Numbered from the stretch's first letter, positions 7,137 to 59,410 are shown. The stretch: DNA of 64,000 bases from Octopus sinensis (GCF_006345805.1 NC_043010.1:26040001-26104000), one strand, 5' to 3'. The notes: generated by a model from the letters alone, not told the origin. Translations and numbers: made by a program.

Positions 7137-7199
7137 TATCAACATAAAAAAAGCACTACACTGTGTCTCATATTTTTGTTTGCCCACTCTGTTATACAT

Positions 7200-12440: not shown

Positions 12441-12445
<5 letters not shown>
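11850..12445 (+). mobile_element. Helitron relic: Pif1-like helicase fragment plus 3' end
   Basis: CTMAHKKAFEAVDKILPDIR...LLSGDF*QTLPVV matches Helitron helicase motifs II/III. CTAGT at 12441-12445. Confidence 0.8.
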
Positions 12446-12521
<76 letters not shown>

Positions 12522-12704
12522 CATTTTGTTTTATTTCATATCTCTTGAAGTTTCTAAATTAAAATAATAGTTCTTATAATGTAAACAACATATGAGTGTG
12601 TGTGTGTGTGTGTATGTGAATAAATATAATAGTAAAATGTGTGTAAAATATATTTGTTTTCCTTTTCTTTTTTTGCCAGTTGTGGGTTTTGGGTATTTTT
12701 CCTT

Positions 12705-12780
12705 ATGGATCTTCAGCACCAAGTTGGCAAAGTGACTCATGTCATTGACCCCAGCAACATTTGGCTACAGCTGTCAACAG
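12705..12780 (+). CDS. Coding exon 1 (exon starts 12680): MDLQHQVGKVTHVIDPSNIWLQLST
   Basis: Acceptor ttttgccag at 12679, donor gttggt at 12781. VTHVIDP..IW.Q matches the first strands of extended (Tudor-SN type) Tudor modules. Confidence 0.85.
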
Positions 12781-15700
12781 GTTGGTCATTATTGTCTCAT
12801 TTAATCTAATACCTGTTATTATCATTGCGACTTTGTGTGTGTATCTGTCTGTACCTGTGTGTGTTTGTGTGTGTATGTATACATATATTTGTGTGTGCTT
12901 TCCTGCAGTGCTTTGCTTAAAATCTACTTTAGTCATTTCATCTTAAAACTTTTCTACTATAATAAGGTGAATTTAATTGAAGGAAAAAAGTTTGTGTGTG
13001 TATTGATTCAATATTGGTCAGAGAATGTTGTCTGTTAAGTAGTAATGTTTTAGTTGTTTGTTTGCATCTGTTTTTTATTTGCTGGTAAGTCACATGATCT
13101 TTTAAGGCTTTAATAGGAAAAGAAAAGAGAAATAGAAATGACTTTCTTGTGTTTGTTTTATGAAAATGAATGTCGATCGAAAGTTTGTTTAAATCAGACA
13201 ACATATGTTTGTGCTACAACTTATTTTCATTTCTGAATTTCTTTCGTTGCTTAAATGATTGTTTAAAAAAAAAATATGGAAGGATGGCATCAGTAAGAAT
13301 ATATTAAATTACATTTGGGAAATGAACTTCTTAAACCATACATTAAATAGATCTGTCCATTGTCACGTCTTCCAAGCACCCTTGACATGGTTCCTCAGCT
13401 GGCCAGAAATAAATCAAATCCTTCTATTGGATGAAAGGAGGACATAACTGAGTAATGTGGTCCTCTGTTTATAGGGAAAAGACTGGGTGGTCTTTGTTGG
13501 ATTGCCTTTGATCATTGCTTTACTGGATCAGTGTTGGTCTGTGATTAAATTTGTTTGTCCATCATTGTTGATGACGACCAAGACTATCACATGGGGAAAG
13601 AAACAGGGCATGATGTGTCTAGCTGTGGTCAGTCAGTCTGATGTGTGCTTACATATAAAGGGGGCACCAAAATATTGGGTTGGTACATAATTATTGTGGC
13701 TTGTTTTTCAACAAATTTTATTCAACAAAAACAATAACAACATGTAACAAAAACATCTTTAAATGATTATTCTAGAGCATATTCACCATCTACTTCAGTT
13801 ACTGCTTCCCCATTTGCTTGGCAGATGGTTAGACTGTCATTGAAAGATGTTTTCGTTGAATATTGTTATTGCTTTTGTTGAATAAAATTTGTTGAAGAAA
13901 AGCTGCAATAATTATGCACCAACCCAATATTATAAGTGCTTAGGACCTCTGTGGGTCTTAATCTGGTCCTGTTAACCCTCAAGCAAGGTGATATTTAGCT
14001 CATGATTAGATATGTCTTCATGGAACATTGGAAAGGAATGATTTCACTTGTATGACAGTGTCACTCTGTTATTCCTATACAATCATCGAGCGATGTCATG
14101 GCAAGGAGGCACAAATACCTAACACCCATATACATATACACAATGGCCTTCTTTTATTTTCTGTCTACCAAATTTGCTCACAAGGTTTTGGTTGTCCCAA
14201 AGTACTTGTCCAAAGTATCATACAGTGAAATTGATCCCGAAACTATGTAGTTGGGAACTGAACTTCTTAACCATGCTGCCATTTGAACTGGATTGCCCAT
14301 CTCCAGTCCACTGCAGGACAAAGGCTTCTGCACATTCTCTCCACTAACCTTAGTCTGATGTACAGGTAGTGAATTTAAGCTTGAGATCATACTAGTTTGC
14401 TGAGCCTACTCTGTCATACTGGCCCAACATACCTTGGCAGAGGGATGCAGTAAAGTTGATTACGGCGACCCCAGTGCTCAACTGGCACTTTTTCTATTGA
14501 TCCTGAATGGATAAAAGGCTAAGTTAACTTCAGTGGGATTTGAACTCAGAACATAGCAGCAGATGAAATACCACTAAGCATTTCGCCCAGCGTGCTAACG
14601 CTTCTGCCATATCTGTGTCTATGTATCTGATAATTGGAAATTGTTTTCCTTTTGTTGATAGCCATGTGACCAAATCCATTACACTTGACAAGCATTTTAT
14701 TAGTTTATAGAGACAAGAGTGGCCATTTGCTGGAGCTGACTTGACCATGGTGCATTAATGAGATGTCCTCAGTGGTGTCTCTACAAGATTGGGAGCCATC
14801 ATTATTTGCAAACATTCTAATGACTCTTTGTTGAAAAATGATGAATCCTTATTTTGCCAAGAAAAATGAAAAACTTTGTGTCCAAAGATCTTTTTATTTC
14901 TTATGAAATTATTGATGTCCATCATCATCTTGTTTTCAGAATCTCTGTTTTATATTTGGGTTTAGTGAAGTTAACGAAAATCTTCATTTTTGAAGATCCG
15001 TTATCTCTTAGGAAATCATTGAAAATTGTTGTTATCCTCATCATTATTTTTGAAATTTCTTTCTGTTTTTCCAGTTGAGTTTTGTGAACTTGAAACTGAC
15101 ATCCAAAAGTGTTTCCACAATGAAAAACCCGCCACACAAATCGGCATGGTCCAGCCCGAGCAGTTTGTTATTGCATATAGCTCTTCAGTTGAGAAATGGT
15201 TACGAGCTCGCATCTCAAGGGTTATGGGGTCAGTTGTCCAGTTTTGCTTACATTTTGTTGATTCTACACATTCTTGTATCTCTTGTATCACATTCTTGTA
15301 TGTCTATCTCTCTTTCTCTCATTTTCTCTGTCTCACGTTATTTCTTTCTTTCTCTTTCTCTTATCGCTCTCTCTATCATCTTTTTCTATCTCTCTCATCT
15401 AGGTTGTCCCATAGGACACACCATAGGGGTTTTGGTTGCACATACTATAAGAGTCACAGGGCACTGCACCATGTGGTCCCGCAGTTTCCATTTAACTAAG
15501 AATATTAGGGTCTCATCCATTGTCTTGCATTCAAGATCCTCTGCATGACATCCTGCTAGTTCAAAGCCAGGAATCTGATCTGTTAGGTCCCCTGCTGACA
15601 ACTAAATCCACGCCCTGCTGTCGATGCTTTGATTTTTCTGTCTCCTACCCTTCGACCTGTCTGGCCTGGTAAGACCTGCCTGAAGGTTTCTCTTCCTCCA

Positions 15701-18700
15701 GCAGAGCTCTCCTGGTCAGTGGAGCACACAGGCACTTCACCGCGACAAGCTACTGGTTGAATTGGCCGTTGACTACACAGTAGTTCTTCCACCCTTTGAC
15801 GGGTCTTACTTTTCATCCTGCAGGATGTCCAACAATCACCCTCCTCACCAAGCAAGCTTGATGGAGGTCACCAGTTTAGTCGCCAACAACCCGACCATGC
15901 AACAGGTTGTACTGAGTTACATGTCACCAGTAGTGTTCTCTCATCTCTCTCTGTTTTTCTTTCATCTCTTTCATCATCTCCATCTCTGATAACTCTCTCC
16001 TTACCTGTCTCTCTCTTTTTATCCTTATATTTTTCATTTTCTCTCTCTTTCTCTCTCTCACACGTAAAATATGGAGTTCATGTGTTTTTGAAGATCTCTT
16101 TTGTAACCACATCTTGTAAACTCCATTGCTGATATCTTATTCTTTTCGTTCCCCACTTTCTTCCAGAGAAAAAGCTGATTTATTTTACTTGGACTATGGG
16201 TTTGCTGAGCAACGACCACTCAATAGAATATCAACTGAATTTCCTCCACGTTTCAGTGAACTAAATGCCCAAGCATTGCATTGTAGATTGTATGGTATTG
16301 AACCTGTGAGTTTACAGTTCTTCCTCTCTCTCTCTTTTACTCTCTTTTACTTGTTTCAGTCATTTGACTGTGTCCATGCTGGAGCACCACTTTTAGTCGA
16401 GCACATTGACCCAGGACTTATTCTTTGTAAGCCTAGTACTTCTTCTATTGGTCTCTTTTGCTGAACCGCTAAGTTACAGGGATGTAAACACACCAGCATC
16501 GGTTGTCAAGCGATGTTGTGGGGACAAACACAGACACACACATGCATACATATATATATACATACGACAGGCTTCTTTCAATTTCCATCTACCAAATCCA
16601 CTCACAAGGCTTTGGTTGGCCCAAGGCTATAGTAGAAGACACTTGCCCAAGGTGCCACGCAGTGGGACTGAACTCGGAATCATGTAGTTTGTAAGCATCT
16701 ACTTACCACAACACCCACTCCTATGCCTCTTAAAAAAAAATTTTTTTTTAAATCCTGTTAGTCTCTTCAGAACCATTTTGTTTCCCATGTCTGGATACCC
16801 AACCACCAAATAATTGAATAAGTTTATTTGCTTGATGGATTACCTGAGTGTCTGCTCGGATATCTGACTGCTAGAAAGTACCAAATCGCCTTCAGTTGAT
16901 TTTGAAAATAATGGAGAATTTAGTTGGAATACACTGGCTTTAAAAATGCAGAATTTAGTAAAATAAACCCTTTTGTTATATTTCTCTTGAAATACATTGC
17001 CTGTGTTCCCATTAAGTTTGAAAATAAGAATTTAGTAAAACAATTTTGTCATAATTTATCTGGTGTTTTGGTTCATAAATTAAGATGCAGTTTTGATGCT
17101 AGGAGCCAGTCAGGCGGCACTAGCATTGACCTACGCTTGAATGGTGCTTTGAGCATAGGTTGATGCTAGTGCCACCTGACTGGCTCCCCATGCTGGTGAC
17201 ATGTAAAAAGCATCATTCAAGCATGGGTCAATGCCAGTGTGCCCTGACTCGCTCCTATGCCAGTGCCTCCCAACTGGCTCCTCTGCCGGTGGCATGTGAA
17301 AAACACCACCTGAATGTTGTCAATGCCAGTGCCCCCTCACTGACTTCCATGCCAGTGGCATGTAAAAAGCACTCACTATACTCTCGGAGTGGTTGGCGTT
17401 AGGAAGAGCATCCAGCTGTAGAAACTTTGCCGGATCAGATTGGATTATGATGCAGCCTTATGGCTTGCCAGTTCTCAGTGAAACCCTCCAACCCATGCCA
17501 GCATGGAAAGCAGATTTTAAATGATGATGATGTTTCCATTTAGATCACTTTAAAACTGGAAGTTTGTATCATAGAATGAGGGCTGTTTGAGGTGAGTTGG
17601 TATGAAAATGGTTAAAACTCTACAATATAAATAAAGTAAACTGTCAAAATACAATGTCTGCTAAGCCCTCTTCCTTGATGTTAATCAAACAGCCACTGGT
17701 AGAAAGCTTACCAAATAAATAAGGTTTCAGCTATGGTGGACTTGGAGGTTAAGGAATTTTAGAATGATATATTTTGTCAGTCTCTTTTTTTTTTTTTTTT
17801 TCACACTTTCGTTACCATATTTCTGTTGAAATACATTGCCTTTTTATTTCATTCGATTTTTGAAAATAATCAATAATTTAGTTAAATCATAAAGTAAGTT
17901 ATGAATATAATATGGCAGAAATGTTAGCTTGACAGACAAAATACCGCTAAGCCTGGCTTTACGTTCTGAGCTCAAATTCCGCCGAGGTCAACTTTGCTTT
18001 TCATCCTTTCAGAGTCAGTAAATTAAATACCAGTTGTGTACTGGTGTCGATCTGATCGAGTATATAATATGGTAGAAAAGAAAGTGGAATGATCAGAGTT
18101 GTGGAGTTTTGGTCTCTCTTATGCCAAAGGCCAACTAAAAAAGGACTACATCAGCAACAACCACCACCACCACCATGACATTCGTAGAAATTATATTCAG
18201 CATTTTCAGTGTTACTTAAATTGATTTTCTCCTTTTCATTCCAAGTGATTTGGGTTTTGTGATGTTTAATTGTAGTGTTTGTTTCCTTTCCAGCTGGCCC
18301 CACCATCATGGATAAACCGAGCCGGGAAAGTACTGAGTAATGTGGTTTCTGGACAAAATTTTTTCGTATTCTTCCATTGTTCCTCAGTTGGCAAATATGT
18401 TGTTTCACTCTACAATTAGTAAGTATTACCCCCCACCTCACCCCAACCACTACCACTGAAATGAATTATTCTGTTGTCTATAATCCTTTTGTAGTCATAT
18501 TTCTAATGAAATGCTCAGGCGAAATGCTTAGCAGTATTTCGTCTGTCTTTATGTTTTGAGTTCAAACTCCGCTGAGGTTGACTTTGTCTTTCATCCTTTC
18601 AGGGTCGATAAATTAAGTACCAGTTGCATACTGGGGTTGATCTAATCGACTGCCCCCCTCCCCCAAATTTCGGGCCTTGTGCCTAGAGTAGAAAATTAGG

Positions 18701-21700
18701 AAAGAATTTTGAGGAAAAACAACTGAACACTGCCCTGTTTTTGATATGTTTATACATTTGTAAGTGTATCTCTACAGATTTTCTGTTGAAATGAGAGCTA
18801 GCACTGAAAGTTGTGATGTTTCATATATGAACACGTCTATGTAAACAATGTGACCGAAGATAGAAAAATAGGTAAAGGGGTGTACATACATGTGAAGAGT
18901 TGTTGCTTCTTCTTGAGTACCACTTCCAACCTATTAACCATTACATTGATTACATTGCCTTCAACCGACTCAGTGCACGACTCTGGTCAAGATCTGAGAT
19001 CCGACGCACCACCAAAGTACGGATCTACCAAGCACTAGTGCGAATGATTCTCCTTTATGGCAGCGAGTCATGGCCAATGAGGGTGGAAGATATTAAGCGA
19101 CTAGAATCCTTCGATCACCTCTGTCTACGCCGCATCCTTCGTGTCCACTGGCATCACTTTGTCTCCAACAATTCGGTGCAACACCAGTGCAGAATCACCT
19201 CCCTCTGACAAGTCATCCTAATGAGATGTCTGCGTTGGCTGGGTCATGCCCTCCGTTGTCAACCAGGAGAATTCATCTACGAAGCAAAATGCCCCAGCTC
19301 CCCTTCAGGGTTGGCGAAAGCGTTGTGGTGGACAGCGAAAAACCTGGCTGATAACGGTCAAGGCTGATCTGGAACCCAACCTAGGCCCCCATATCTACGG
19401 CGTTCACCGCTGGAATAAGGAGTGGTCGGAGATCATGCGGTCGTTAGCCTCAAATCGCCAGACCTGGTCAGCGTTTGTGAGAGATGCAGCATTGAGGATA
19501 AATGAAGCCAGCTCAACCCACCCCGGGTGAATGCTGTACGAAGAAGAAGTTTAGTGGTGTAACACCATTGGCTAGATCAATTTTACATATTCCTGGTAAC
19601 TGGTATCTACATATTCCTTTATTCTTTTACTTGTTTCAGTCATTTGACTGTGGCCATGCTGGAGCACTGCCTTTAGTTGAACAAATCGACCCCAGGACTT
19701 ATTCTTTGTAGGCCTGGTACTTATTCTATTGGTCTCTTTTCCCGAACTGCTAAGTTACGGAGACGTAAACACACCAACATTGGTTGGTCAAGTGAAGGTG
19801 GTGGGACAAACACAAGCACACACAAATACATACATACATACATACATATGATGGGCTTCTTTCAGTTTCCGTCTACCAAATCCACTCACAAGGCTTTGGT
19901 CAACCCGAGTTTACAGTAGAAGACACTTGCTCAAGGTGCCACACTGTGGGACTGAATCTGGAACCACGTGGCTGGGAAGCAAGCTTCTTAAGCTATGTCC
20001 ACCTTGTATATTATGGTCGCAAAAGAAATACAGTGTCCCTACCAGCAATCAATAGGTCTAGACATGCTCTTGTACACGTTTCAGTCATTTGACTGTAGCC
20101 ATACTGGAGCACCACCTTTTGTTGATTAGTTGTCAAGTGATGGTGGGGGAACAAACAAAGATACATATACATAAATATATATATGTATATATACATGACA
20201 GGCTTCTTTCAGTTTCCGTCTACTAAATCCACTCACAATATGTTTATATGAAAGGCTTCTTTCAGTTTCCGTCTACTAAATCCACTCACAATATGTTTAT
20301 ATGAAAGGCTTCTTTCTGTTTCTGTCTACCAAATCCACTCACAATATGTTTATATGAAAAGCTTCCTTCAGCTTCCATCTACCAAATCCAATGTGCTGTA
20401 ATTTTAATTGTTATATTGTTTACTGGATTTATTTCTCATCGTCATTTAAAAACCACTTTTCCATGCTCACATGAGTGAAACACAATTGCTGGCAAGAAGT
20501 GAGATGTGTAAATGAATCAGCTGCTCTCGACATCCTGCAAAGAGTTTTGGCATCAAAACTATTTTTTTAAAGGCTACAGAAAGAACATTCTAGAAACTAC
20601 ATCATGCTACAACTTCACACTGACCACGGGAAACTATTGTGGTACCCTTGTGCTGTCTGATCGCATATCTAATGATTTGGTTTCAAATCACTGCTACAAC
20701 CTGTTTTCAAAGAATCTTTTTAATTAAAATATTTCCTTTATGTTTTTTTTTCCATTACAGTCAAACTCTGCGCAGTGTCATTCATGAATTGTTGGAGTCT
20801 GAAGTTTGTAAAGTAAGTACAGAATTGTATTTGATTTTCCTACTTTATTTTTTGCCTTCTTACAGCTTAGGTAAACTTAGCCGGTGCATTTAGTCTCATA
20901 GCCAAGGACACAGTGAGGCTGTTGAGAAATCAGCAATTGGTTGATTTTCATGATTGTGACTCATTCAAATTATATTTCTGTCCTGTTGTCAACTGGATTC
21001 ATTACAAAATTTTAGAGCAGAAAGTGCCTGGTCATAGTTTTGCTCATTTGAATGAGACTGAATGTTTATGTTGGTGTTTGCTGTTGCCGTTATTCTTTAG
21101 TATGACATTGGCCCTGAACAAGCATACATATAAATTAGAAGCATTCCAGCCACAATCATCCAATTTTTTTTTTTTCAACCCTAAACATTTATTTACTATT
21201 TTGTCCATTTTCATCTTTTAAACAGTAGGCTGTGGCTTGATGGAGATTTGGCTGCTGTTTCTAACAGGTTGAGTTTTTGTGATCACTATACTAGCAATAG
21301 CCTTTTTAAAAGTTTTTTATGAGCATGCTATCCTAAAATTTAGGATTTGAAGTATGTGGTTTATATTTTCAAGCTGGAAGTTTGATGAGGGACGACTGGC
21401 AGTAATATGAACCAGGCTGAGTTTATATGTGAAACTTTCCTCACCCACTATTAATTGGTGAATGGTCTATTTGCAGACAATATAACGGAAAATGGAGTTA
21501 ATAATAAATGTGGCTGGGGTTTAATTTATTTCAAGGGTTGCATTGAGGGAGAATGTAGATGTGGACATAACTTTCTTATTAACTGACATAGTTTGTTCAG
21601 ATTGCATATGTTTGATAGAGTAACTCTTCCACTTTACAAAAGTTTCTACTCAACATAGTCTCTTTCACAAGTGATACATTTATACCATCTTTGGACCCAA

Positions 21701-29676: not shown

Positions 29677-29707
<31 letters not shown>

Positions 29708-35086: not shown

Positions 35087-35139
<53 letters not shown>

Positions 35140-41100: not shown

Positions 41101-44100
41101 TAATACTAATGGTTTCAAATTTTGGCGTAAGGCCAGCAAATTTGGGGGGAGTGGGTAAGTTGATAACATTAATCCCCAGTACTCAACTGGTACTTATTTT
41201 ATTGACCCTGAAGGGATGAAAGGCAAAGTTAACCTTGGCGGAATTTGAACTCAGAATGTAGAGAAGCTAAAATAATGCTAGGCATATTGTGACCAGTGAT
41301 GTATAACTATATCTGATATTCTGGCCAATACCATGGTATGTCATATTTACCCCTTTCATTACCAAACTGAATGAAACCAGCTCTAGCTCTGAGTACAAAT
41401 GTCTTGTTTTCATAAGTTTTGAATTAAAATCTTCCACCAAACCTTTGTCACAATTTATGTTCCTAACACTAGCTGAACGATAACTAAATTATTTTACTCA
41501 ATTCTTTGTTATATTTAAAATTAATTGAAAGAAACACAGAGCATCTCAACATTGAATCTTGTGGTGTGTGACCAATTAAAGCACTTCATGCTACTTTAGT
41601 GGTGTTTGAATTTAGAGTGCAAGGCATTTGTCTGATGTAACGAAAGGGTTAATGTTTATTTCTTTGTAATCTCTGTTTTTTCTCTTCCTGTCTTTTCTTT
41701 CAGAAGATGTTCTTTCACACCATTTAGGACAATTCTCACCAAATGGTTGAACTTCTCCAATGTAAGTTGGAGCATTTTTTGATTTTATGCTGGAGAATGT
41801 TTATTGTATTTCATCCTTACAAAACTTACTGTTTTTATGTTTACTGGACCACATTCCATCCCTGCCCATCCCATATTTTTCTTTCAAACAGTGTATTTAG
41901 CACTATGCTATTGAATATGACTCTCTTCTTATTTTATAGCCATCTGAGTATGATTTGAAGGAGATTAGACTGCTATTTCTAGCAGAGAAAGCAACCTTGT
42001 TGGCTTAGTGTTTTAGTGTTGCTCTTCACCCCTACTGATAAACCTTTATTGACCCTGCCGTCCTGTATTTTTGTGCATTAGGAATTACATTATCTACTCT
42101 TTCATTTCTTGAAGATAATCAAGTGTGCTTTATGAGAGATTTGGCAGCTATTTCTAGCCAGCTGAGCAACCATGTGGAGGCTTCTCCAATGACCCATGGC
42201 TCTTTCATTAGCTTAACCCACCTTCCATCCCTTATTAGTGTAGTTTAAAGAGGTAGATTATTGGAAACAGAATTACCAGTGAGCTGTTGGCAGCAAATAG
42301 CTTTCTTGTATGCCAAGAGCAGAAGTGTGATGCTACATGGCAGCAGTACATGGGCCTTGAATGTAAAACGAGTGTAGAAGCTGCATAGAAACATCATGGA
42401 CATCATCATCAGTTTTACATCCGCTTTTCCATACTTGCTTGGTGGAATTTGTCAAATCATATTTTCTATGGCTGGATGTCCTTGCTGTCATTAAACCTCA
42501 CCTGTTTCCAAGCAAGCAGGGACGTGCTGCCTGGCTAGGTAGGCAGTGCCTACCCTGAATAAGATAGGTCAATAGCAACATTTTCCTTTTATGGCAAAAT
42601 ATGCATATAATTCAATAAAACTGAAGGTTACTCTGATTATTATGCATAAAATACAAAATATTTTATTTTTTTGTAGATTAGGTAGGCATACTTCGCCCCT
42701 GCCTTTCAATCTCAGTATTAAAACTACATATAGTACTGCTGTAGTACACATGCTGCGTACATTCCTACAACAACATTTTCTTTATGTGCTATAAAGGCAG
42801 AAGTAAATCTGCCTCTAACTCAGTCGTGTACCTATGTTTCGCTTATTTTGTTTAATGTTTTACTACATAAACGTCACCAACTGCCTACCCTGAGTAATTA
42901 CTGACAGCATGTACCTACAAACAAAGTAATAATTCTTTGGCCACACATGTTTGTTACAGAAAGAAGGTTGGAAATAAACAACACTGCTTGTATGACGGTG
43001 ATGCTTTTTTACAACTATCATGTGATGTCAAGATAAAGATACACACAAAGGGCTTCTTTCAGTTTCTGTCTACCAAAGCCACTCACTAGGCTTTGGTCAG
43101 GCTGATCTTATAGTAGGAAACACTTGCCCAAGGTTCCATGCAGTGGAATTGAAACCGAAATCCATTGGTTCAGAAGCAAGTTTCTTAACTGCTCAGCCAT
43201 ACTTGTTCTTACACACTAAGCACAATCTGTTGGTGATTACACAACAACAACTTAGATATAAGGTTGAGTGCATGCAAGCAGTGGCAGTGGAGGAAGAGTA
43301 AGTCTTCGTCTTGTATTGTGCAGTAATAGATGAAGCAGCTGCGTTTGTACAGATGTGATGTAAATGGACAACTCCACGTAACCCTTTAGCATTCAGATTA
43401 CTCTGTCAAATGTTATATTTACTCATTTACTTGTTTCAGTCATGTGATTGTGGCCATGCTGGAGCACCACCTTAAGTTGAGCAAATCGACCCCAAGACTT
43501 ATTCTTTGTAAGCCTAGTATTTATTCTATTGAGTTCTTTTGCCGAACCGCTAAGTTAGGGGGACGTAAACATACCAGCGATGTTGATGGGGGGGGGGGAC
43601 ACTGACACACAAACGTATACACCCTCATATATATATATACACAACAGGCTTCTTTCAGTTTCCATCTACCAGATCCACTCACAAGACTTTGGTCAGCCAG
43701 AGGCTATAGTAGAAGACACTTACCCATGGTGCCACACATGTGGTTCGTAAGCAAGCTACTTACCACACAGCTACTCCTATGCCTGTTTGTTTATTCACAT
43801 TGTTTTGAATTAATTCTGCATTAACTTGTAGCTTTGAAGTTTCAGTGATGCAATTATTTATTTTTAGATTGACTTTCTAGGATAGGTATAAGAGGCCAAC
43901 TCTGACCAGTTTGAACTTAAAACAGGTAGAATATTTGGGCTGGAAATGGCTGAATTAAATGCTAAAGAGCTAAAGGAAAACAGGAGTGTGTGTGGCAGAA
44001 GAAGTCCTAGGAAGACAATGGGAGGAAGTAGTGAGACTGGTGATTGAGTGATGTGTATTTCCTTATTTTATGATGGATCCTTGTAGAGAAGAAAAGCTTG

Positions 44101-47100
44101 AAGTGTTTTGAGAGGACAGGAATCTACTCTGCAGGAATTTGTTTGAAGGTCAAGGAAGAGAGTTTGCCAGTACTGGTCACCTTGTTGGATTATTGGAGGG
44201 ACCAGAGAAGAAGTTTTTTTAATTTAGTTTCAGGTTTGCAATTATTGAATAGACTTATGATCAAAAACGTTCCAGCTATGACCATCCCATCTTTTATTGA
44301 ATTGAAAAAATGCATCTAAGACAACATGAGCCAATATTCTTTTAAAGACATGAAGTCATGTTTGGCAGCAACTGTATGTACATAACAGTGAAGTAGGTGG
44401 AGCAGAGGGCAGGTTGGAGAAGAGTTTTGTGTATGTCTTTTCTATGATGTCATTTGAGAGAGATTTGGTTGCTATTTCTTGTTAGGCTTACAAAGAATAA
44501 GTCCTGGGGGTGATTTCTTCGACTTAAAAACCTTTCAAGGCAGTGCTCCAGCATGGCTGTAGTCAAAAGGATAAAAGAAAGGAAGAAAAATGCCAAAATC
44601 AAAGTAAATTTCTTAACTCTTGGATTTCAAATTTCAATGATTTTTTTTTTTTGCAGCCCAACAATTCTCCACAAAGTGATTGTAATTTGTGTAATCTCTA
44701 CCAGCATTCATTCCTCGACTTTTGGACAGTTGCTGGTCTCAGTTGTTTGCAGAATCTGTCTTCAGAATTCACGGGTTTTCTCAGGAGAGAGATGAAATCA
44801 ATGATCCTTAGTACCAGTGTGGAATTGTAAGTAAAGAAAATATATTAAAATGGAGTCGTTTTTGTGAAGTTTTGTGTGATGTTACTTTAAAGAAACTAAT
44901 TGTGGAAGGTTGGAATAATGCGAGAGGATATAGAGTCAACGACAAAAACAAAAACAAAGTGGAATATTTATGAATTGGCATCTGAGATTTTAGTAGAAGA
45001 CTTACACACACACATGCGTGCACATGCATGTATGAGACGAAGAACTGTAAGCCCTGACAGAATCCAAACCTTGTCTATCACATTACATGTGTATTTGTTG
45101 CATTCTGTTCATGTTTATAATGTTACACACACACATGTATAACTAACATACATACATGCACATATAATGTGCATCTGTGTGTGTGTGTGTGTATGTGTTT
45201 CTTAAGGTGGATTTCAGATAGGTTCAACAATTTTGTTATAAACGTATATTCTGCCATGGATCGATGTATATCAGTTTTTAAATGTACCAATGTATCAGTC
45301 ATTAAAATGTTAAAACATATTAAAAATCTATGAGTACATAAATATATAAAGATTTAATATACATATATAGATAGATGAATGGGATTAAGTTCTAAAAGTG
45401 TAGATGTGGGCAATGTGTAGATGTGTATACAATACACAAAGAAATCTTATGTGAATCATTTTATACATCTTATTCAATGCATGTCTATTCCTTTTTTTTT
45501 TCCATCAAAGTGCGGTGCGGTCAAGGTTGTTTTCCATCTTTGTTGAACAAGAACAGATGCTGTACAGTCAGGAGCAGAAATCAGTTGAAACAGTTGGAGT
45601 CCAGACAGACATTCCAACTGTGCCAGAAAAGGCTGATATTGGTAGGTAAACCCCAGCATAATGATCCCATTCACTAATCGTGGTTCCTTCAGTCCTCCTC
45701 TTCTCCCATATTCATTACTTGTATACTTGCTATACCCTTGAGTTGCTTAAGATGGTATTGTAGTACCATTGTTGTAGTACGCCATTCTGGAGCTGTTGTC
45801 TTCCTACAACATGCTATAAATGTTGTTATTGTGCAGTAGCAACCACAGACCCCTGTGGTAGGTAAGTAGTGATCCCAACAGCCAGATACAACCCACAGAT
45901 TTATTGTTGTGGATATGCTTGCTTCCCAGTCATTTGATCATGGATTCAGTCCCACTGTGTGACCCCTTTGGTAAGTGTCTTCTAGTTTAGCCTCAGGTTG
46001 ACCAAAGCTTTGTAAGTAGATTTGGCACATAGAAACTGGAAGGAGCTCAACGTGTGTGTGTTTGTGTGCGTGTGTACTCTCATGGTTGTAAATGAGCATC
46101 CCTGTCATACGTGTTGGGTTGTTCACTTCCAGACTTCTGTGGTAATTAACTCCAACTTTGGAGAAATATTACCCTCCTTAGAAACAGGTGAGGGTTGGCA
46201 ACAGGAAGGACATCTGCCTCAACTAATTCCATCCAGTCCCATGCTGCCATTCAATGGGGAAACCATCTACACATTGTGACAGGCAGCAGTTAATTGTCTA
46301 AGGTGCAGTGTGACAAGCTGGACATGTAACCAGTGTTGTCCATTTTAATTTCCTGTGTGTTAGCCTCTGTGGATGTGGGCAAAGTGACCGACAGATTTAA
46401 AAAATAATTTTTTGTAACTAAACACTTTCAAACTTCAGACACTGGTAGAATGTGTCATATAAAACATCTTTTACTCTTAGCGTTTTTGAGAAAAACTATA
46501 TTTACAAAGTAATTTCATGTTAAAGTTTTCCTATTTCGGTAATTTCAACCAATCAATGACATGTATTCAGCTGAATAAAATTACTGCCATTGTTTGTCAA
46601 CAAGAACTTTCGGCGGTGTATTTTTCATTTGTCACTGTTATTCATGACAACCCTAACCCTTTCCTTAAAACCCTAAAGCTAAAACCAGTACAAACACGAA
46701 CAATGTCATAAATAACGGTGACAAACGAAAAATACACTACCGATAGTTGTTGTTGACAAACAACGGCAGTAATTTTATTCAGCTGAATACACGTCATTGA
46801 TTGGTTGAAATTACCGAAATAGGACAACTTTAATGTGAAATTACTTTGTAAATATAAGTTTTTCTCAAAAATGCTAAGAGTAAAAGATGTTTTATATGAC
46901 ACATTCTACCAGTGTCCAAAGTTTGAAAGTGTTTAGTTACGAAAAATTATTTTTTAAATCTGTCGGTCAAAAAGTAAAGATCCAGTGAATGAAGCTAGAG
47001 TGCAACAGCTGTTACTTTTGTTCTGGACATATTGGTAAATCATATTGGTAAATACTGCTAGTATTGTGACATGGGTAAAGCATCAGTGTGAATGGATGCT

Positions 47101-48331: not shown

Positions 48332-48363
<32 letters not shown>

Positions 48364-48720
48364 CATATTACAGAGAAGAACATACCACCACCATGTTCTT
48401 AATGATGAAATTAACCTCTCTGTCTATATATATCTACCCTCTTTGTAATGTTGGCAAATGAAATATAAGAATGTGCATTGTCCGTTTAATTAAAAAATTC
48501 TATATGTGGCTGAAGATTGCTCGACATTTTAAAACTGATGTAATACTTAGTGTTTAATAAAATGAAGTAGCATGAAAGGATTGTACTACACTACCTTGGA
48601 TATCCTTGTTGCTTATTTTGATTATAACCACCCCATTTGATTATATGGATAATACCATACAAAATTTTGGTGCCTTTAACTTAAGTACCATATTCATCTG
48701 AATCTAAATTTTGCTGAACT

Positions 48721-48754
<34 letters not shown>

Positions 48755-50179
48755 TACATACACACATACACTTCCTGTGTTGGTTTATATATATTTTATA
48801 TTTGTAACTGAAAACAAAACTGAAAAATGCCATTCTTGTAAATATTTAAACACTTCCTTTTTCTTATATTCTTTCTTCTTTTCCATTCTTTTATTACAGA
48901 TCCTGTGCAATTGTCACCTGATCACAATATTCCAATGTACCAGCAGAATGGAGACACGTCAGCTGTTGATTCCTGGACCCAGCCTAATTTCTCTGAGCCA
49001 GCAGACATCATTGACAACGTGGAGACAGATTATAACTCCAGCCAAAATGCGCCTTTAGAACATCAGTTCAGTGCCCTTTACAGCAGGGATAACCCAGCCT
49101 CCCCTCCTTTGACTCCGCCATTGGATTCAACTCGATGTTGTTCAACTGAACTCTTACAATCGTCTGAGTTTCCATGTGCTGCTTCGCCTCCACGGTCAGC
49201 ATCACCAGAACCAGAGCCGGAAGAAGAGAACGACTCCCCACCTCTCAACTCTGATGATTTGGAGGTCCTGCCAGAGAGAGTCTCTCATCAGGAGAAATAT
49301 CTCTCACAACGGTACAGTTCCGATTTGGAATTGAAACGACCGTCTGCGATGTCTCTGAACTTGTTTGAACCTTACTTCCTTGAAAAGACCCTTGAGTCAG
49401 CATCGGCCCCTTGTCCCTCTCCACCTCAACCACCTCCTCAAATCGAAGAAGAAAAAGAAGTACCCAACATGGTAGACGAGGTTGAGGAGAAACAAGCAAA
49501 TTCAGAATTGTTGCGAGGGAGCTATGCTGCTCGAGTGGCTGATTCATCTGGTGATGGCCCTAATAGGAATGCCAACAGCCGGACTTCCAACCGAAATAAT
49601 CCATTATTTGACTATCCCGATGACCACATTGCTGCTATACGAAATAATGCTAGGGATATCGGTAATGGCAAAATTCGATTTGTTGCTAAGCGACTGGTTC
49701 CCGAGAAAGGGACCACAGTTATGAACACGTCCTGCAATTATGAACTACGGGGTAAAAAAAATGGCACTTTCCCATCTTTCTCTTCTACTAATGCGACACC
49801 CTTAACTTCCTCTTGTGTGTCCTCACAAACTTCAAAAGGAAGGGCTTCTTCTAGCACTAAAAAGACACTGTCAGGGAACAAGCCTGCTAGCAATATGTCA
49901 CAGGAGCACATAACAAAGTCAGTGCATCTCTCTAGTTTACGCACAAATTCGGAATCAGACACACGGACTTCCACTGCCGATGTTAGGTATGCAAACACAG
50001 ATGCCAAAGCTGGCAGCATGCACTCTCAGCCCGAGCCCAGCTTGAAGCTGAATTCACGGTCAGTGGGTAGGACTCAAAGTTGTAGTCAGGAAATACCGTG
50101 TTACCAGTGTACTATATGTGGTAAGGAAGGGCACCAGAGTCATCAATGCCCCAACCATTCCAAGTATTTTTTTATGTAA
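12705..50179 (+). CDS. Multi-exon gene (19 coding exons, ~1135 aa): Tudor + MIF4G-like + C-terminal CCHC zinc knuckle protein
   Basis: join(12705-12780,15075-15228,16167-16305,18294-18418,20761-20812,22125-22170,24003-24326,28025-28153,29725-29908,34347-34466,35366-35453,36263-36338,38223-38336,38885-38949,40679-40755,41704-41761,44657-44826,45511-45641,48900-50179). Every intron is GT..AG with a pyrimidine tract, phases match at all 18 junctions, and the total is 3408 nt with no internal stop. Missed symmetric exons cannot be excluded. Confidence 0.88.
13673..13929. mobile_element. Mariner-type MITE
   Basis: TA|ttgggttggtacataattattg ... caataattatgcaccaacccaa|TA. Mariner-like TIRs with TA TSD. 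Confidence 0.85.
15075..15228 (+). CDS. Coding exon 2: Tudor core (EFCELETDIQ...AYSSSVEKWLRARISRVMG)
   Basis: tttttccag acceptor, gtcagt donor, phase 1 to 2. W.RARI motif. Confidence 0.9.
15395..15915 (-). mobile_element. RTE-clade LINE 5' region fragment
   Basis: Minus strand contains an RTE-like 5' leader (ccaggccagacaggtcgaagggtag). GC-richer than flanks. Family assignment is from resemblance only. Confidence 0.45.
16167..16305 (+). CDS. Coding exon 3: Tudor core (EKADLFYLDYGFAEQRPL...ELNAQALHCRLYGIEP)
   Basis: ctttcttccag acceptor, gtgagt donor. DYG and QA..C.L.GI.P are Tudor hallmarks. Confidence 0.93.
16343..16727 (-). mobile_element. tRNA-derived SINE family B (representative copy)
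   Basis: Pol III A/B-box-like head on the minus strand and a central (CA)/(TA) tract. Other copies at ~1100-1270, 19622-19990, 23287-23662, 39730-39890, 43040-43200, 43425-43783, 56245-56600 (+) and 63425-63660. Confidence 0.85.
18294..18418 (+). CDS. Coding exon 4: extended Tudor C-terminal part (LAPPSWINRAGKVLSNVV...YVVSLYN)
   Basis: cctttccag acceptor, gtaagt donor, phase 0 to 2. W...A pattern typical after a Tudor core. Confidence 0.85.
18880..19550 (+). mobile_element. RTE-clade LINE 3' fragment
   Basis: TKVRIYQALVRMILLYGSESW...FDHLCLRRILRV.W and GGQRKTW motifs. Ends ccgggtgaatg plus a short GAA tail. Confidence 0.88.
20201..20390. repeat. 53-bp tandem repeat x3.6 derived from a SINE B body
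   Basis: Unit ggcttctttcagtttccgtctactaaatccactcacaatatgtttatatgaaa at 20201, 20254, 20307 and 20360. Confidence 0.9.
20761..20812 (+). CDS. Coding exon 5 (QTLRSVIHELLESEVCK)
   Basis: ttttccattacag acceptor, gtaagt donor, phase 2 to 0. Confidence 0.85.
21646..22060 (-). mobile_element. Mariner transposase C-terminal fragment (decayed)
   Basis: HLDNAGPH motif (DD34D second Asp). A frameshifted C-terminus reads WVQRWYKCITCERDYVE*. Confidence 0.75.
22125..22170 (+). CDS. Coding exon 6 (PDGEVPIAEYIASPS)
   Basis: ttctttcag acceptor, gtaagt donor. Supplies the required phase 0 to 1 link. Confidence 0.8.
22869..23070 (-). mobile_element. Penelope-like element RT fragment
   Basis: IPALYGLHKNHK...GPPRRPVCS resembles the PLE YGLPK.HK...P.RP motif. 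Confidence 0.6.
24003..24326 (+). CDS. Coding exon 7 (linker, PYNDNRG...DYMFASN)
   Basis: Poly-T ag acceptor, gtgagt donor, open frame within ORF 23867..24451. Confidence 0.88.
24427..24790 (-). mobile_element. SINE family C with RTE-like 3' end and (GAT)n tail (representative copy)
   Basis: catcatcgtttaacgtc...gctggatgcccttcctaacgccaacc consensus. Copies at 711-1016, 11551-11815, 17090-17532 (+), 33945-34250, 35650-36055, 40410-40605 (+), 48052-48320, 52235-52412 (+), 57975-58290, 60285-60565 (+) and 63655-64000 (+). Confidence 0.85.
25990..26415 (+). mobile_element. LINE 3' end, Tx1/L1-like (copy 1)
   Basis: Homologous to 27600-27995 (aggtgggtgaaagttg ... cccacactt ... gtggcaaataaat), followed by a (CAT)/(ATT) tail. 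Confidence 0.6.
26427..27240 (+). mobile_element. tRNA-derived SINE family A, head-to-tail cluster
   Basis: aaggcggtgagctggcagaa head, gttcaaattcc B-box and (ATT/ATC)n tails. Other copies at 5688-5893 (-), 5913-6115, 18505-18700, 29200-29700, 30370-30820, 34680-34890, 40905-41280 (-) and 56740-57040. Confidence 0.85.
27400..28015 (+). mobile_element. LINE 3' end, Tx1/L1-like (copy 2)
   Basis: Residual frame LKRKVRAGREVLSLSEFMKRWVKV resembles the Tx1-type ORF2 C-terminus. aataaa plus (ATT)n tail. Confidence 0.6.
28025..28153 (+). CDS. Coding exon 8 (SLDCNYSNSK...NNNPRNL)
   Basis: ttgcag acceptor, gttagt donor, phase 1 to 1. Confidence 0.8.
28180..29160 (+). mobile_element. Decayed Tx1/L1-like LINE fragment (copy 3) with a 56-bp tandem duplication at ~29015-29130
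   Basis: Shares the tatactatgtatac 3'UTR motif with copy 2. Residual coding-like sequence. Confidence 0.4.
29725..29908 (+). CDS. Coding exon 9 (STRFDSTP...WNPSFEP)
   Basis: ttttctgtag acceptor, gtatgt donor, phase 1 to 2. Confidence 0.85.
30940..32285 (-). mobile_element. CR1/L2-clade LINE RT 3' portion, decayed
   Basis: VVYLDFAKAFNSVPH, SGVPQGSVLGP, KYADNIK and WNPY motifs on the minus strand, with stops and frameshifts. (ATT)n tail at 30940-30967. Confidence 0.92.
32820..33175 (-). mobile_element. Short RTE-related non-autonomous retroposon fragment
   Basis: Minus-strand tail ...VDPATPINRDKTRI plus a (GAT)n end, typical of RTE 3' ends. Confidence 0.45.
34347..34466 (+). CDS. Coding exon 10 (QQPSLSPNYL...PPKPNLP)
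   Basis: tattttcag acceptor, gtaaat donor, phase 2 to 2. Confidence 0.83.
35366..35453 (+). CDS. Coding exon 11 (NNWSTSWGS...ELAQKLQQ)
   Basis: tttttgtag acceptor, gtaagc donor, phase 2 to 0. Confidence 0.85.
36263..36338 (+). CDS. Coding exon 12 (VLPSTHSNVHWPQLYWEMDQLFLDF)
   Basis: catttcag acceptor. The gtaact donor was chosen because the next exon needs phase 1. Confidence 0.75.
38223..38336 (+). CDS. Coding exon 13: MIF4G-like helix (ELSSAQKLNLILKTVLTQAIQEPNFFNNAITLIFYFQ)
   Basis: tttgtttcag acceptor, gtaagt donor. A..EP.F motif of MIF4G domains. Confidence 0.88.
38885..38949 (+). CDS. Coding exon 14 (DHNNFENSLRTTITDLEIDHVK)
   Basis: cattttcag acceptor, gttggt donor, phase 1 to 0. Confidence 0.83.
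40679..40755 (+). CDS. Coding exon 15 (PESSTAETFADLLGHIFVEICSRNS)
   Basis: gtttaccag acceptor, gtaaga donor. Resembles the MIF4G F..F(L/I)GEL(F/Y) helix. Confidence 0.85.
41704..41761 (+). CDS. Coding exon 16 (RCSFTPFRTILTKWLNFSN)
   Basis: Long CT tract plus cag acceptor, gtaagt donor, phase 2 to 0. Confidence 0.83.
43378..43972. mobile_element. piggyBac-like MITE interrupted by a SINE (43425-43783)
   Basis: aaccctttagcattcag ... aatgctaaag termini. The halves match intact copies at 25190-25385 and 51715-51936. Confidence 0.75.
44657..44826 (+). CDS. Coding exon 17 (PNNSPQ...FWTVAGLSCLQ...STSVE)
   Basis: Poly-T gcag acceptor, gtaagt donor, phase 0 to 2. Confidence 0.87.
45511..45641 (+). 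CDS. Coding exon 18 (AVRSRLFSIF...VGVQTD...KADI)
   Basis: ttccatcaaag acceptor, gtaggt donor, phase 2 to 1. Confidence 0.85.
46385..46969. mobile_element. Foldback / long-TIR MITE (265-bp arms, 54-bp spacer)
   Basis: 46385-46649 is the near-perfect reverse complement of 46704-46969. No clear TSD. Confidence 0.85.
48900..50179 (+). CDS. Terminal coding exon 19: S/P/E/T-rich disordered region ending in zinc knuckle CTICGKEGHQSHQC
   Basis: Strong CT tract plus ttacag acceptor. 424-aa ORF in the track. CX2CX4HX4C at 50108-50149. Confidence 0.92.
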
Positions 50180-50341
50180 CTGCTGTTCACATTCAGTGTT
50201 GGTCCCTGGCGCGACTGTTGTTTGGTATTTTGAAAGGTTTCATCTGTCTATCAATCCGCATTGCATTTGATACTGATGGATAATCAATCACTTTCAATCG
50301 ATCACTAAAATCTCTTGCACTGCATCATCAATTCTTCATCA

Positions 50342-50391
<50 letters not shown>

Positions 50392-51130: not shown

Positions 51131-51181
<51 letters not shown>

Positions 51182-54702: not shown

Positions 54703-54741
<39 letters not shown>

Positions 54742-56371: not shown

Positions 56372-56411
<40 letters not shown>

Positions 56412-57325: not shown

Positions 57326-57330
57326 TCTTT

Positions 57331-57932: not shown

Positions 57933-57975
<43 letters not shown>

Positions 57976-59354: not shown

Positions 59355-59410
<56 letters not shown>

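What the first reader, a model, noticed from the sequence alone, without database searches (positions are those of the whole stretch)
12705..50179. Unrecognised Tudor + MIF4G + zinc-knuckle protein: candidate germ-granule/piRNA adaptor linked to translation or cap machinery
Seen in sequence: a phase-consistent 19-exon ORF of ~1135 aa with an extended Tudor domain (aa ~1-180), an N/Q/S/P-rich linker, a helical domain with MIF4G-like motifs (aa ~480-690), a long disordered region and a terminal CCHC knuckle (aa 1113-1126). Established: extended Tudor proteins (TDRD1/5/6/7/9/12, RNF17) scaffold PIWI/germ-granule complexes. MIF4G domains (eIF4G, PAIP1, CTIF, SLIP1/MIF4GD, CWC22) bind DEAD-box helicases or cap complexes. 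CCHC knuckles bind ssRNA. I know no named gene combining all three. Inference: a lineage-restricted adaptor coupling Tudor-mediated RNP assembly to translation, export or decay. This is the best candidate for an undescribed system in the window.
Basis: partly seen in the sequence, partly recalled or inferred. Interest (0 to 1): 0.85.

Follow-up and report, generated by a model that had tools for sequence, protein, structure and literature searches.

The report
Uncharacterised cephalopod Tudor–HEAT–zinc-knuckle gene
The window holds a real, already-annotated but unstudied octopus gene, found only in cephalopods, whose protein joins a Tudor domain, a helical domain that looks like (but is not proven to be) a MIF4G domain, and a terminal zinc knuckle, so it is probably a scaffold for RNA-protein particles.

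Summary
Window 12705-50179 (+) carries a 19-exon, all GT-AG, 3408-nt CDS. Its 1135-aa product is identical to RefSeq XP_029644678.1, "uncharacterized protein LOC115218864 isoform X3" of Octopus sinensis.

Orthologues with the same end-to-end layout exist in O. bimaculoides, Argonauta hians and Sepia pharaonis. Two decapodiform transcriptomes carry the whole ORF uninterrupted on 3.8-4.4 kb contigs, so it is one gene. dN/dS is 0.05-0.18 in every region.

- **Tudor:** solid (Pfam 59 bits), but the methyl-arginine cage is degenerate.
- **CCHC:** spacing is exact and invariant, but below Pfam's cut-off.
- **MIF4G:** only weakly supported. Correctly spliced sequences give no Pfam or PDB sequence hit, and HHalign gives 42% over 34 columns. 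A confident AlphaFold model (pLDDT 81, ten helices) has MIF4G domains as its best structural neighbours (TM about 0.5, Foldseek E at least 0.05).
- **New lead:** an invariant VPPGFxPLG (PPGΦ, a GYF-domain ligand).

The germ-granule/piRNA and cap-machinery roles remain untested inference. Verdict: a new domain architecture within the Tudor scaffold class, restricted to coleoid cephalopods in the databases searched. The sequence is already public but uncharacterised. Interest is moderate.

The parts
12705..12780 (+). Exon 1 (coding part, ATG at 12705; aa 1-25). An AG acceptor at 12678-12679 suggests one or more unidentified non-coding 5' exons upstream.
15075..15228 (+). Exon 2 (aa 26-76), first half of the Tudor core
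16167..16305 (+). Exon 3 (aa 77-123), second half of the Tudor core (LFYLDYGF)
18294..18418 (+). Exon 4 (aa 124-164), SN-like C-terminal extension of the eTudor
20761..20812 (+). Exon 5 (aa 165-182), last helix of the eTudor
22125..22170 (+). Exon 6 (aa 183-197)
24003..24326 (+). Exon 7 (aa 198-305), linker with the conserved RIPSADLSVFDxTSELTPEK motif. The alternative donor at 24332 gives isoforms X1/X2 (+EC).
28025..28153 (+). Exon 8 (aa 306-348), conserved predicted helix KTLxEVMNDVQSQIQELY
29725..29908 (+). Exon 9 (aa 349-409). It holds the invariant VPPGFQPLG (window 29805-29831), a PPGΦ-type candidate GYF-domain ligand.
   Evidence: PMC12171015 for the motif definition
34347..34466 (+). 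Exon 10 (aa 410-449)
35366..35453 (+). Exon 11 (aa 450-479), start of the helical domain
36263..36338 (+). Exon 12 (aa 480-504)
38223..38336 (+). Exon 13 (aa 505-542). It holds KLNLILKTVLTQAIQEPNFF, the only stretch that aligns to the eIF4G MIF4G profile.
38885..38949 (+). Exon 14 (aa 543-564)
40679..40755 (+). Exon 15 (aa 565-589)
41704..41761 (+). Exon 16 (aa 590-609). The NAGNAG alternative acceptor at 41707 gives isoform X2 (minus R).
44657..44826 (+). Exon 17 (aa 610-665)
45511..45641 (+). Exon 18 (aa 666-709), end of the helical domain
48900..50179 (+). Exon 19 (aa 710-1135 plus stop). Disordered tail with conserved islands FEPYFLEKTLE, RGSYAARVA and KIRFVAKRLVPE, and the terminal knuckle.
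12705..22170 (+). Extended Tudor domain (aa about 1-185, exons 1-6). Cage positions read S61, L68, Y84, Y87, F89 instead of F/Y, Y, Y, Y, N.
35403..45598 (+). Ten-helix HEAT-type, MIF4G-like domain (aa about 462-695, exons 11-18)
50108..50149 (+). CCHC zinc knuckle CTICGKEGHQSHQC (aa 1113-1126), followed by the conserved PNHSKYFFM C-terminus

Best explanation
**Shown.** This is the Octopus sinensis gene LOC115218864. It is an intact, selectively constrained, single protein-coding gene, found so far only in coleoid cephalopods. The protein has five parts:
1. an N-terminal extended Tudor domain;
2. a disordered S/P/N-rich linker with a few invariant short motifs, including VPPGFxPLG;
3. a ten-helix HEAT-repeat domain whose nearest solved structures are MIF4G domains;
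4. a roughly 420-residue disordered tail with three invariant islands;
5. a C-terminal CX2CX4HX4C zinc knuckle.

**Inferred mechanism.** It is a multivalent scaffold of cytoplasmic RNA-protein particles.
- The Tudor domain docks a protein partner. Its aromatic cage is degenerate, so binding is probably independent of arginine methylation, or uses a non-canonical mode.
- The helical domain is a docking platform. If it is truly MIF4G-like, it would bind a DEAD-box ATPase such as Vasa, DDX6 or eIF4A/eIF4AIII.
- The PPGF motif could recruit a GYF-domain protein (GIGYF/4EHP type or CD2BP2 type).
- The knuckle could touch single-stranded RNA.

The logic parallels TDRD5/TDRD7/Tejas, where a helicase-regulating LOTUS domain is fused to Tudor domains. 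Whether it acts in the piRNA pathway or germ granules is not known.
For: **Gene reality and unity**
- The exon model is identical to RefSeq.
- Orthologues are collinear over their full length.
- Decapodiform mRNAs carry the uninterrupted ORF in six sequencing runs.
- dN/dS between the two decapodiform transcripts is 0.11 (Tudor), 0.16 (linker), 0.08 (helical domain), 0.18 (tail) and 0.045 (knuckle).

**Tudor**
- PF00567 scores 59 and 55 bits against a cut-off of 23, and hits all four orthologues.
- The best PDB sequence relatives are eTudors of Tudor-SN, TDRD1, Papi and SND1.

**Helical domain**
- AlphaFold2 gives pLDDT 81.3, pTM 0.76 and ten helices. The fold is reproduced in the full-length run.
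- Foldseek's highest-TM, probability-1.0 hits are all MIF4G domains: Paip1 0.51/0.57, DAP5 0.48/0.51, eIF4G, CNOT1 and Cwc22. Other alpha-solenoids score TM 0.2-0.32.
- HHalign aligns the 'AIQEPNFF' helix pair to the 'FEKAISEPNF' helices of eIF4G at the equivalent position, P = 2.7e-4.

**Knuckle**
- The spacing is exact and invariant in all species. UniRef names the orthologue 'CCHC-type domain-containing protein'.

**PPGΦ**
- VPPGFxPLG is invariant inside an 18%-invariant linker. The motif definition comes from PMC12171015.

**Analogy**
- MIF4G, eLOTUS and RRM domains are cited together as DEAD-box modulators in PMC12526068.
Against: - **No sequence-level MIF4G signal on the real protein:** Pfam finds none, a PDB profile search finds none, and HHalign gives only 41.6% probability over 34 columns.
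- **Weak structural statistics:** Foldseek has no hit at E <= 0.001, and the best is 0.05. The model rests on a 4-sequence alignment.
- **Degenerate Tudor cage:** two of four aromatics are lost and the Asn is replaced (S61, L68, F89). Canonical recognition of PIWI sDMA is therefore unlikely.
- **Weak knuckle:** it scores below Pfam's cut-off (16-17 against 20.8 bits) and lacks the aromatic residue after the first Cys that usually stacks on RNA bases.
- **No functional anchor:** there is no expression, localisation or interaction data, and no homologue outside cephalopods from which to transfer function.
- **PPGF is only four residues:** it can occur without binding a GYF domain.
Confidence: 0.55

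Rival explanations
1. The gene is a lineage-specific scaffold unrelated to MIF4G biology. The helical domain would be a fast-evolving generic HEAT/ARM-like module with no DEAD-box partner. The protein could work in somatic (for example neuronal) RNP or non-RNA complexes rather than in the piRNA pathway or germ granules.
For: No Pfam or PDB sequence match to MIF4G. Foldseek E is at least 0.05 and TM only about 0.5. The Tudor cage is degenerate. The knuckle is below the Pfam cut-off. There are no tissue data. The helical domain is only 28% invariant between octopods and decapods.
Against: MIF4G domains are clearly the best structural neighbours, well ahead of other solenoids. The ten-helix count matches MIF4G's five HEAT repeats. 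The one HHalign match lies at the equivalent position of the domain. PF00567-type Tudors are typical of germline and RNP proteins.
Confidence: 0.3
2. The terminal knuckle, and perhaps part of exon 19, is an exapted retroelement Gag fragment captured by a Tudor gene. It would contribute little beyond nonspecific nucleic-acid binding.
For: The CX2CGX2GHX4C pattern is the retroviral/retrotransposon knuckle type. The locus is littered with reverse-transcriptase and integrase fragments.
Against: There is no Gag or capsid Pfam hit anywhere in the protein. The knuckle and its flanks are 57% invariant across coleoids, with dN/dS 0.045. That points to an old, constrained, host-function element.
Confidence: 0.05
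3. Annotation artefact: two neighbouring genes (a Tudor gene and a helical/knuckle gene) fused by gene prediction, or a decaying pseudogene.
For: The introns are long (up to 4.4 kb) and full of repeats.
Against: Uninterrupted full-length ORFs lie on assembled transcripts from two other cephalopods in six runs. The same layout is seen in five species. All 18 introns are GT-AG with consistent phases and no stop. dN/dS is far below 1 everywhere.
Confidence: 0.02

Closest known systems
TDRD5 / TDRD7 (Drosophila Tejas / Tapas): LOTUS + extended Tudor scaffolds of nuage
   Same: Both fuse one or more eTudor domains to a second folded module, with long disordered regions. In TDRD5/7 that module (eLOTUS) binds and stimulates the DEAD-box helicase Vasa (PMC5458760). 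MIF4G domains are the other classic DEAD-box regulators (PMC12526068). The design logic would therefore be the same.
   Different: There is no LOTUS domain here and only one Tudor. The helical domain is HEAT-type, there is a C-terminal CCHC knuckle, and the Tudor cage is degenerate. No sequence homology outside the Tudor domain. Helicase binding is not shown.
MIF4G-domain adaptors (PAIP1 middle domain, DAP5/eIF4G HEAT-1, CNOT1 MIF4G, CWC22)
   Same: A predicted ten-helix, five-hairpin right-handed solenoid of about 230 residues. These are the top structural neighbours at TM 0.44-0.57. There is a local profile match over the helix 2-3 'AI.EP.F' motif.
   Different: Below every sequence threshold for PF02854. 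Foldseek E is 0.05-0.5. None of the known MIF4G proteins carries a Tudor domain or a terminal knuckle. Partner-binding residues could not be assessed.
Single-eTudor adaptors with incomplete aromatic cages (TDRKH/Papi, Tudor-SN/SND1, TDRD1 eTud domains)
   Same: These are the best PDB sequence matches for aa 8-134: 2wac, 5m9n, 5vqg and 2o4x. They share the same SN-like extension.
   Different: Those proteins pair Tudor with KH, SN or MYND domains. Here the positions aligned to the cage F, Y and N are S61, L68 and F89.
PPGΦ-bearing clients of GIGYF1/2 (TTP, ZNF598, TNRC6)
   Same: An invariant PPGF sits inside a disordered region of a putative RNA-associated protein. PPGΦ is the defined GYF ligand (PMC12171015).
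   Different: Only the four-residue motif is shared, and binding is untested.

Membership tests
Extended Tudor (Pfam PF00567, TSN/TDRD type) | Profile match above the curated cut-off | tested here: met
   59.1 bits (window protein) and 55.1 bits (P0001) against a cut-off of 23. All 4 orthologues match.
Extended Tudor (Pfam PF00567, TSN/TDRD type) | SN-like strands flanking the Tudor core (N-terminal strand plus C-terminal beta-strands and helix) | tested here: met
   Alignments to TDRD1 eTud (5m9n) and Papi (5vqg) run from aa 8-10 to aa 132-134. Strands 136-164 and helix 165-180 are predicted after the core, at low pLDDT.
Extended Tudor (Pfam PF00567, TSN/TDRD type) | Four-aromatic cage plus Asn that binds symmetric dimethyl-arginine | tested here: not met
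   In the alignments to Tudor-SN, TDRD1 and SND1, the cage F aligns to S61, WYRA to W67-L68-RA, and DYGN to DYG-F89. Only Y84 and Y87 are kept. The same holds in all orthologues.
MIF4G (Pfam PF02854) | Profile match above the curated cut-off (30.8 bits) | tested here: not met
   No hit at E <= 1 on four full-length orthologues, nor at E <= 10 on the four isolated domains. The 17.2-bit hit was on a composite that lacked exon 12 and contained a false exon.
MIF4G (Pfam PF02854) | Sequence or profile similarity to solved or bona fide MIF4G domains | tested here: inconclusive
   A PDB profile search gave no MIF4G chain at E <= 10. HHalign against a 59-sequence eIF4G MIF4G profile gave probability 41.6%, P 2.7e-4, over 34 columns. 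The reversed-template control gave P 0.12.
MIF4G (Pfam PF02854) | Fold: five HEAT-like helical hairpins (ten helices) in a right-handed solenoid of about 200-240 aa | tested here: inconclusive
   The AF2 model has ten helices, pLDDT 81.3 and pTM 0.76. The best-TM Foldseek hits are MIF4G domains (TM 0.44-0.57, probability 0.94-1.0), but E is 0.05-0.5 and rmsd 5.5-9 Å.
MIF4G (Pfam PF02854) | Binds a DEAD-box ATPase or cap/poly(A) factor | not testable with these tools
   Needs binding or ATPase assays, or complex prediction.
zf-CCHC zinc knuckle (Pfam PF00098) | CX2CX4HX4C spacing with conserved Gly residues | tested here: met
   CTICGKEGHQSHQC at aa 1113-1126. The C, C, H, C positions are invariant in all orthologues.
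zf-CCHC zinc knuckle (Pfam PF00098) | Profile match above the curated cut-off (20.8 bits) | tested here: not met
   16.2-17.2 bits, E 0.006-0.012. UniRef nevertheless names the O. bimaculoides orthologue 'CCHC-type domain-containing protein'.
Any characterised TDRD family member (TDRD1-12, RNF17, SND1, AKAP1, TDRKH) | Orthology or shared domain architecture | tested here: not met
   A full HMMER scan of 1.84 billion representatives with exon 19 found only two cephalopod clusters. A profile search with the full-length alignment found only four cephalopod proteins, all unnamed. Cluster members are all 'uncharacterized'. Sensitivity limits apply to the word-indexed search.
GYF-domain ligands (PPGΦ motif) | PPG followed by F/I/L/M/V in an accessible region | tested here: met
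   VPPGFQPLG at aa 376-384, invariant apart from Q/R, in a region with pLDDT below 50. Motif definition from PMC12171015. Binding itself is not testable here.

The most novel reading that the evidence does not exclude
Coleoid cephalopods evolved their own Tudor scaffold. In it, a MIF4G-type domain rather than a LOTUS domain recruits and regulates a DEAD-box ATPase (Vasa, DDX6 or eIF4A). An invariant PPGF motif brings in GIGYF-4EHP. Tudor-organised (possibly PIWI-containing) granules would thereby be wired directly to cap-dependent translational repression. That would be a convergent, lineage-specific solution to the helicase-plus-Tudor design seen in TDRD5, 7, 9 and 12.
Probability: 0.12. Interest if true: 0.8.

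Novelty: new variant of a known kind. Interest (0 to 1): 0.45.

Why it matters
Tudor scaffolds organise germ granules and piRNA factories, and each characterised one pairs Tudor domains with a second module: LOTUS, KH, MYND, RING, helicase or nuclease. A Tudor protein whose second module is MIF4G-like, with a GYF-ligand motif and a zinc knuckle, would be a new way to couple granule assembly to helicase control and translational repression.

It is also a clean example of a conserved gene confined, so far as these searches show, to coleoid cephalopods. Coleoids have unusual RNA biology and few functionally annotated lineage-specific genes.

The finding is not a new system. The protein is already in RefSeq and UniProt, and every functional statement beyond the domain map is inference.

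Tried and rejected
1. **Ab initio exon chaining.** I used my own splice and codon-usage dynamic programme. It recovered 14 of the 19 exons exactly and the 5' ends of two more. It also inserted false exons: a LINE tail at 19267-19526, 23075-23254, 36182-36218 and others. It missed exons 4, 8 and 12. I rejected it once the orthologue was available.
2. **A tempting eTudor-like ORF at 16896-16957** ('GEFSWNTLALKMQNL'). It had phase conflicts and is not an exon.
3. **A word-indexed search with a spliced Tudor composite** found nothing. The reason is unclear, because the cluster that holds this exact protein was found later. The true exon 4 was not in that query.
I then submitted only the contiguous exon-19 translation, and that found the orthologues.
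5. **The Pfam MIF4G hit of 17.2 bits** is discounted. The composite lacked exon 12 and contained a false exon, and the correctly spliced domain sequences of the four orthologues give no hit.
6. **Weak Pfam hits** to DUF7627, DUF7943 and STAT_linker (E 0.003-0.09, one member each) are treated as noise.
7. **Block-shuffle controls for HHalign** were uninformative, because 12-column blocks keep the short motif intact.
8. **Full-length AlphaFold** with four sequences failed to fold the Tudor domain (pLDDT 25-40). Cage geometry was therefore read from sequence alignments only.
9. **The look-up of encoding contigs for P0001** returned nothing, because only the longest isoform is on record.
10. **Literature searches** for Tudor+MIF4G, cephalopod Tudor/PIWI, the LOC identifiers and the run accessions found no description of this protein.

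Full report
**What is there**

The window is eukaryotic, about 38% GC and crowded with SINE-like repeats, microsatellites and retroelement fragments. My own ab initio chaining of open frames and splice sites found many exons but was unreliable in the repeat-rich introns.

The breakthrough came from the uninterrupted translation of the last exon (window 48902-50176). Scanned with HMMER against 1.84 billion representative proteins, it gave only two real hits:
- P0001, 1138 aa, 99% identical;
- P0002, 1142 aa, 32% identical.

I mapped P0001 back with tblastn and fixed the boundaries on the DNA. This gives 19 exons between 12705 and 50179, all introns GT-AG, phases consistent, CDS 3408 nt and 1135 aa.

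That protein is letter-for-letter XP_029644678.1, 'uncharacterized protein LOC115218864 isoform X3 [Octopus sinensis]'.

Two alternative splice choices visible in the DNA explain RefSeq isoforms X1 and X2:
- a donor at 24332 instead of 24326, which adds Glu-Cys;
- a NAGNAG acceptor at 41707 instead of 41704, which removes one Arg.

**One gene, conserved and constrained**

A profile of P0001 and P0002 retrieved four clusters, all cephalopod:
- O. bimaculoides and O. sinensis;
- Argonauta hians (1426 aa);
- a Sepia cluster that includes Acanthosepion pharaonis entries;
- a second decapodiform cluster, 75% identical to the Sepia one.

The two decapodiform proteins are encoded as single uninterrupted ORFs on 3.8-4.4 kb contigs assembled from six sequencing runs. 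These are spliced mRNAs, with 240-340 nt of 5' UTR. Alignment is collinear from the first Tudor strand to the last residue.

Nei-Gojobori dN/dS between the two decapodiform transcripts is 0.11 (Tudor), 0.16 (linker), 0.08 (helical domain), 0.18 (tail) and 0.045 (knuckle). dS is near saturation in places, so the ratios are approximate.

**Tudor domain**

Pfam PF00567 matches aa 10-120 at 59 bits against a cut-off of 23, and matches all four orthologues. The best PDB sequence relatives are extended Tudor domains: Drosophila Tudor-SN 2wac, TDRD1 5m9n, silkworm Papi 5vqg and SND1. The TDRD1 and Papi alignments start at aa 8-10 and run to aa 132-134, so the SN-like extension is present.

Those same alignments show a degenerate methyl-arginine cage:
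- the Phe before the W-Y-R-A strand aligns to S61;
- WYRA reads W67-L68-R-A;
- DYGN reads D-Y87-G-F89 (Tyr in decapods);
- only Y84 and Y87 survive.

The substitutions are shared by all orthologues. From what is established for eTudors, this argues against canonical recognition of symmetrically dimethylated arginine in PIWI tails. It does not exclude methylation-independent binding, which is described for other incomplete-cage Tudors (my own knowledge, not tested here).

**Helical domain: is it MIF4G?**

Sequence tests are negative or marginal.
- The 17.2-bit Pfam MIF4G hit I first saw was on a composite that lacked exon 12 and carried a false exon.
- On correct sequences there is no MIF4G hit, neither on full-length orthologues at E <= 1 nor on the four isolated domains at E <= 10.
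- A profile of the domain finds no MIF4G chain in the PDB at E <= 10.
- I retrieved bona fide eIF4G MIF4G domains (all PF02854) and built a 59-sequence profile. HHalign gave 41.6% probability, P = 2.7e-4, over 34 columns.
- Those columns are the 'KLNLILKTVLTQAIQEPNFF' helices against 'RLKGVIDLIFEKAISEPNF', at the equivalent position in both domains. A reversed-template control gave P = 0.12.

Structure is more telling.
- AlphaFold2 on the four-sequence alignment gives a confident all-alpha model: mean pLDDT 81.3, pTM 0.76, ten helices forming five hairpins.
- The full-length run reproduces it as the only confident region, aa 465-690.
- Foldseek against the PDB finds nothing at E <= 0.001.
- The hits with the highest TM-scores and probability about 1.0 are all MIF4G domains: Paip1 middle domain (TM 0.51/0.57, 16% identity), DAP5 (0.48/0.51), yeast eIF4G (0.44/0.46), CNOT1 (0.48/0.51) and Cwc22 (0.51).
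- Other solenoids (ZER1, PP2A-B56, SARM1 ARM, TOG, symplekin) sit at TM 0.2-0.32.

My reading: it is a HEAT-repeat domain of MIF4G-like topology. Homology to MIF4G is plausible but unproven, and partner binding is unknown.

**Knuckle and short motifs**

CTICGKEGHQSHQC has exact CX2CX4HX4C spacing. The four ligands are invariant, and the whole last 30 residues are 57% invariant between octopods and decapods. Pfam scores it just under its cut-off, at 16-17 against 20.8 bits. UniRef calls the orthologue 'CCHC-type domain-containing protein'. It lacks the aromatic residue after the first Cys, so RNA binding is an inference.

The disordered parts have pLDDT below 50 and are 43-45% N/Q/S/P/T. They contain a few invariant islands:
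- RIPSxDLSxFxxTSxLTPEK;
- a predicted helix, KTLxEVxxxxxSQxQExY;
- VPPGFxPLG;
- FEPxFLEKTLE;
- RGSYAARVA;
- KIRFVAKRLVPE.

VPPGF fits the PPGΦ consensus that GYF domains bind, as in GIGYF2 clients such as TNRC6 and ZNF598 (PMC12171015). This is a new, testable lead towards translational repression, but only a motif match.

**Mechanism and comparison**

- **Shown:** a conserved single gene with the layout eTudor, disordered linker, HEAT (MIF4G-like) domain, disordered tail, CCHC.
- **Inferred:** a multivalent RNP scaffold.

The closest functional analogues are TDRD5/TDRD7 (Tejas/Tapas). There a LOTUS domain that binds and activates the DEAD-box helicase Vasa is fused to Tudor domains (PMC5458760). 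MIF4G domains are the other classic DEAD-box modulators (PMC12526068).

It is not a member of any characterised TDRD family. No relative with a name or a described function was found. Literature searches for Tudor+MIF4G, cephalopod Tudor/PIWI and the locus identifiers returned nothing relevant.

**Limits**

- The 'cephalopod-only' statement rests on one exhaustive HMMER scan with the poorly conserved exon 19 and on word-indexed profile searches. A distant orthologue in other molluscs could have been missed.
- The AlphaFold alignment has only four sequences.
- I have no octopus transcript and no tissue information.

**Verdict**

This is a new domain combination within the known class of Tudor scaffolds. 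The sequence is already public but unstudied, and interest is moderate.

Noticed in passing
window 24326/24332 and 41704/41707: Tandem alternative splice sites. A second strong donor (GTAAGT) lies 6 nt downstream of the exon-7 donor. A NAGNAG acceptor sits at exon 16. Together they reproduce exactly the +EC and -R differences among RefSeq isoforms X1, X2 and X3.
   Followed up: yes
window 9559-10737 (+), 31469-32201 (-), 18876-19527 (+), 4316-4675 (-): Retroelement debris. Reverse-transcriptase (RVT_1) fragments lie upstream of the gene and, on the opposite strand, inside intron 9. A LINE-tail-like ORF lies in intron 4 (no Pfam match; my ab initio model wrongly took part of it as an exon). An integrase-core (rve) fragment lies at about 4.3-4.7 kb. 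All are broken into short ORFs.
   Followed up: partly
e.g. window 16333-16710, 19615-19991, 23270-23664, 43378-43784, 26403-27253, 29209-29718, 30195-30830: A dispersed repeat family of about 380 nt, SINE-like, with 10-20 copies inside the 64 kb window. Its frame-translations (…LSVSVYQIHSQGFGWP…) create many spurious long ORFs in the introns. Self-similar sequence covers about 25-40% of the window.
   Followed up: partly
window 16896-16957 (+): An open frame flanked by AG/GT reads VDFENNGEFSWNTLALKMQNL, which looks like the 'W...A...F..LV' segment after a Tudor core. It is out of phase and absent from all orthologues. It is a chance look-alike and a warning for reading exons by eye.
   Followed up: yes
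window 12678-12704: The ATG exon is preceded by a good polypyrimidine/AG acceptor at 12678-12679. Orthologous transcripts have 240-340 nt of 5' UTR. One or more non-coding 5' exons and the promoter should therefore lie upstream, but they were not located. The GC-richer block at 10-12 kb is a LINE fragment, not an obvious CpG island.
   Followed up: no
window 7037-7136 and 57331-57430: Two runs of exactly 100 N (scaffold gaps), both outside the gene.
   Followed up: no
window 1-12700 and 50180-64000: No second cellular gene is evident in either flank at the ORF level. Only transposon fragments, microsatellites and repeats were seen. The locus appears to be the only gene in the 64 kb.
   Followed up: partly
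exon 19, window about 51.4 kb-less: aa 865-875, 915-923, 967-978 (window about 49365-49397, 49515-49541, 49671-49706): Three islands (FEPYFLEKTLE, RGSYAARVA, KIRFVAKRLVPE) are invariant from octopus to cuttlefish inside an otherwise fast-evolving disordered tail. They match no Pfam family and were not predicted to fold. They are likely partner-binding linear motifs of unknown specificity.
   Followed up: partly
P0005 (Argonauta hians orthologue), versus window aa about 230-250, 780-900, 1000-1100: The Argonauta protein is 290 residues longer because of low-complexity insertions (poly-N, poly-S, poly-G, poly-H/Q, acidic runs). These fall only in the disordered regions. The Tudor, helical and knuckle parts are unchanged.
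   Followed up: no
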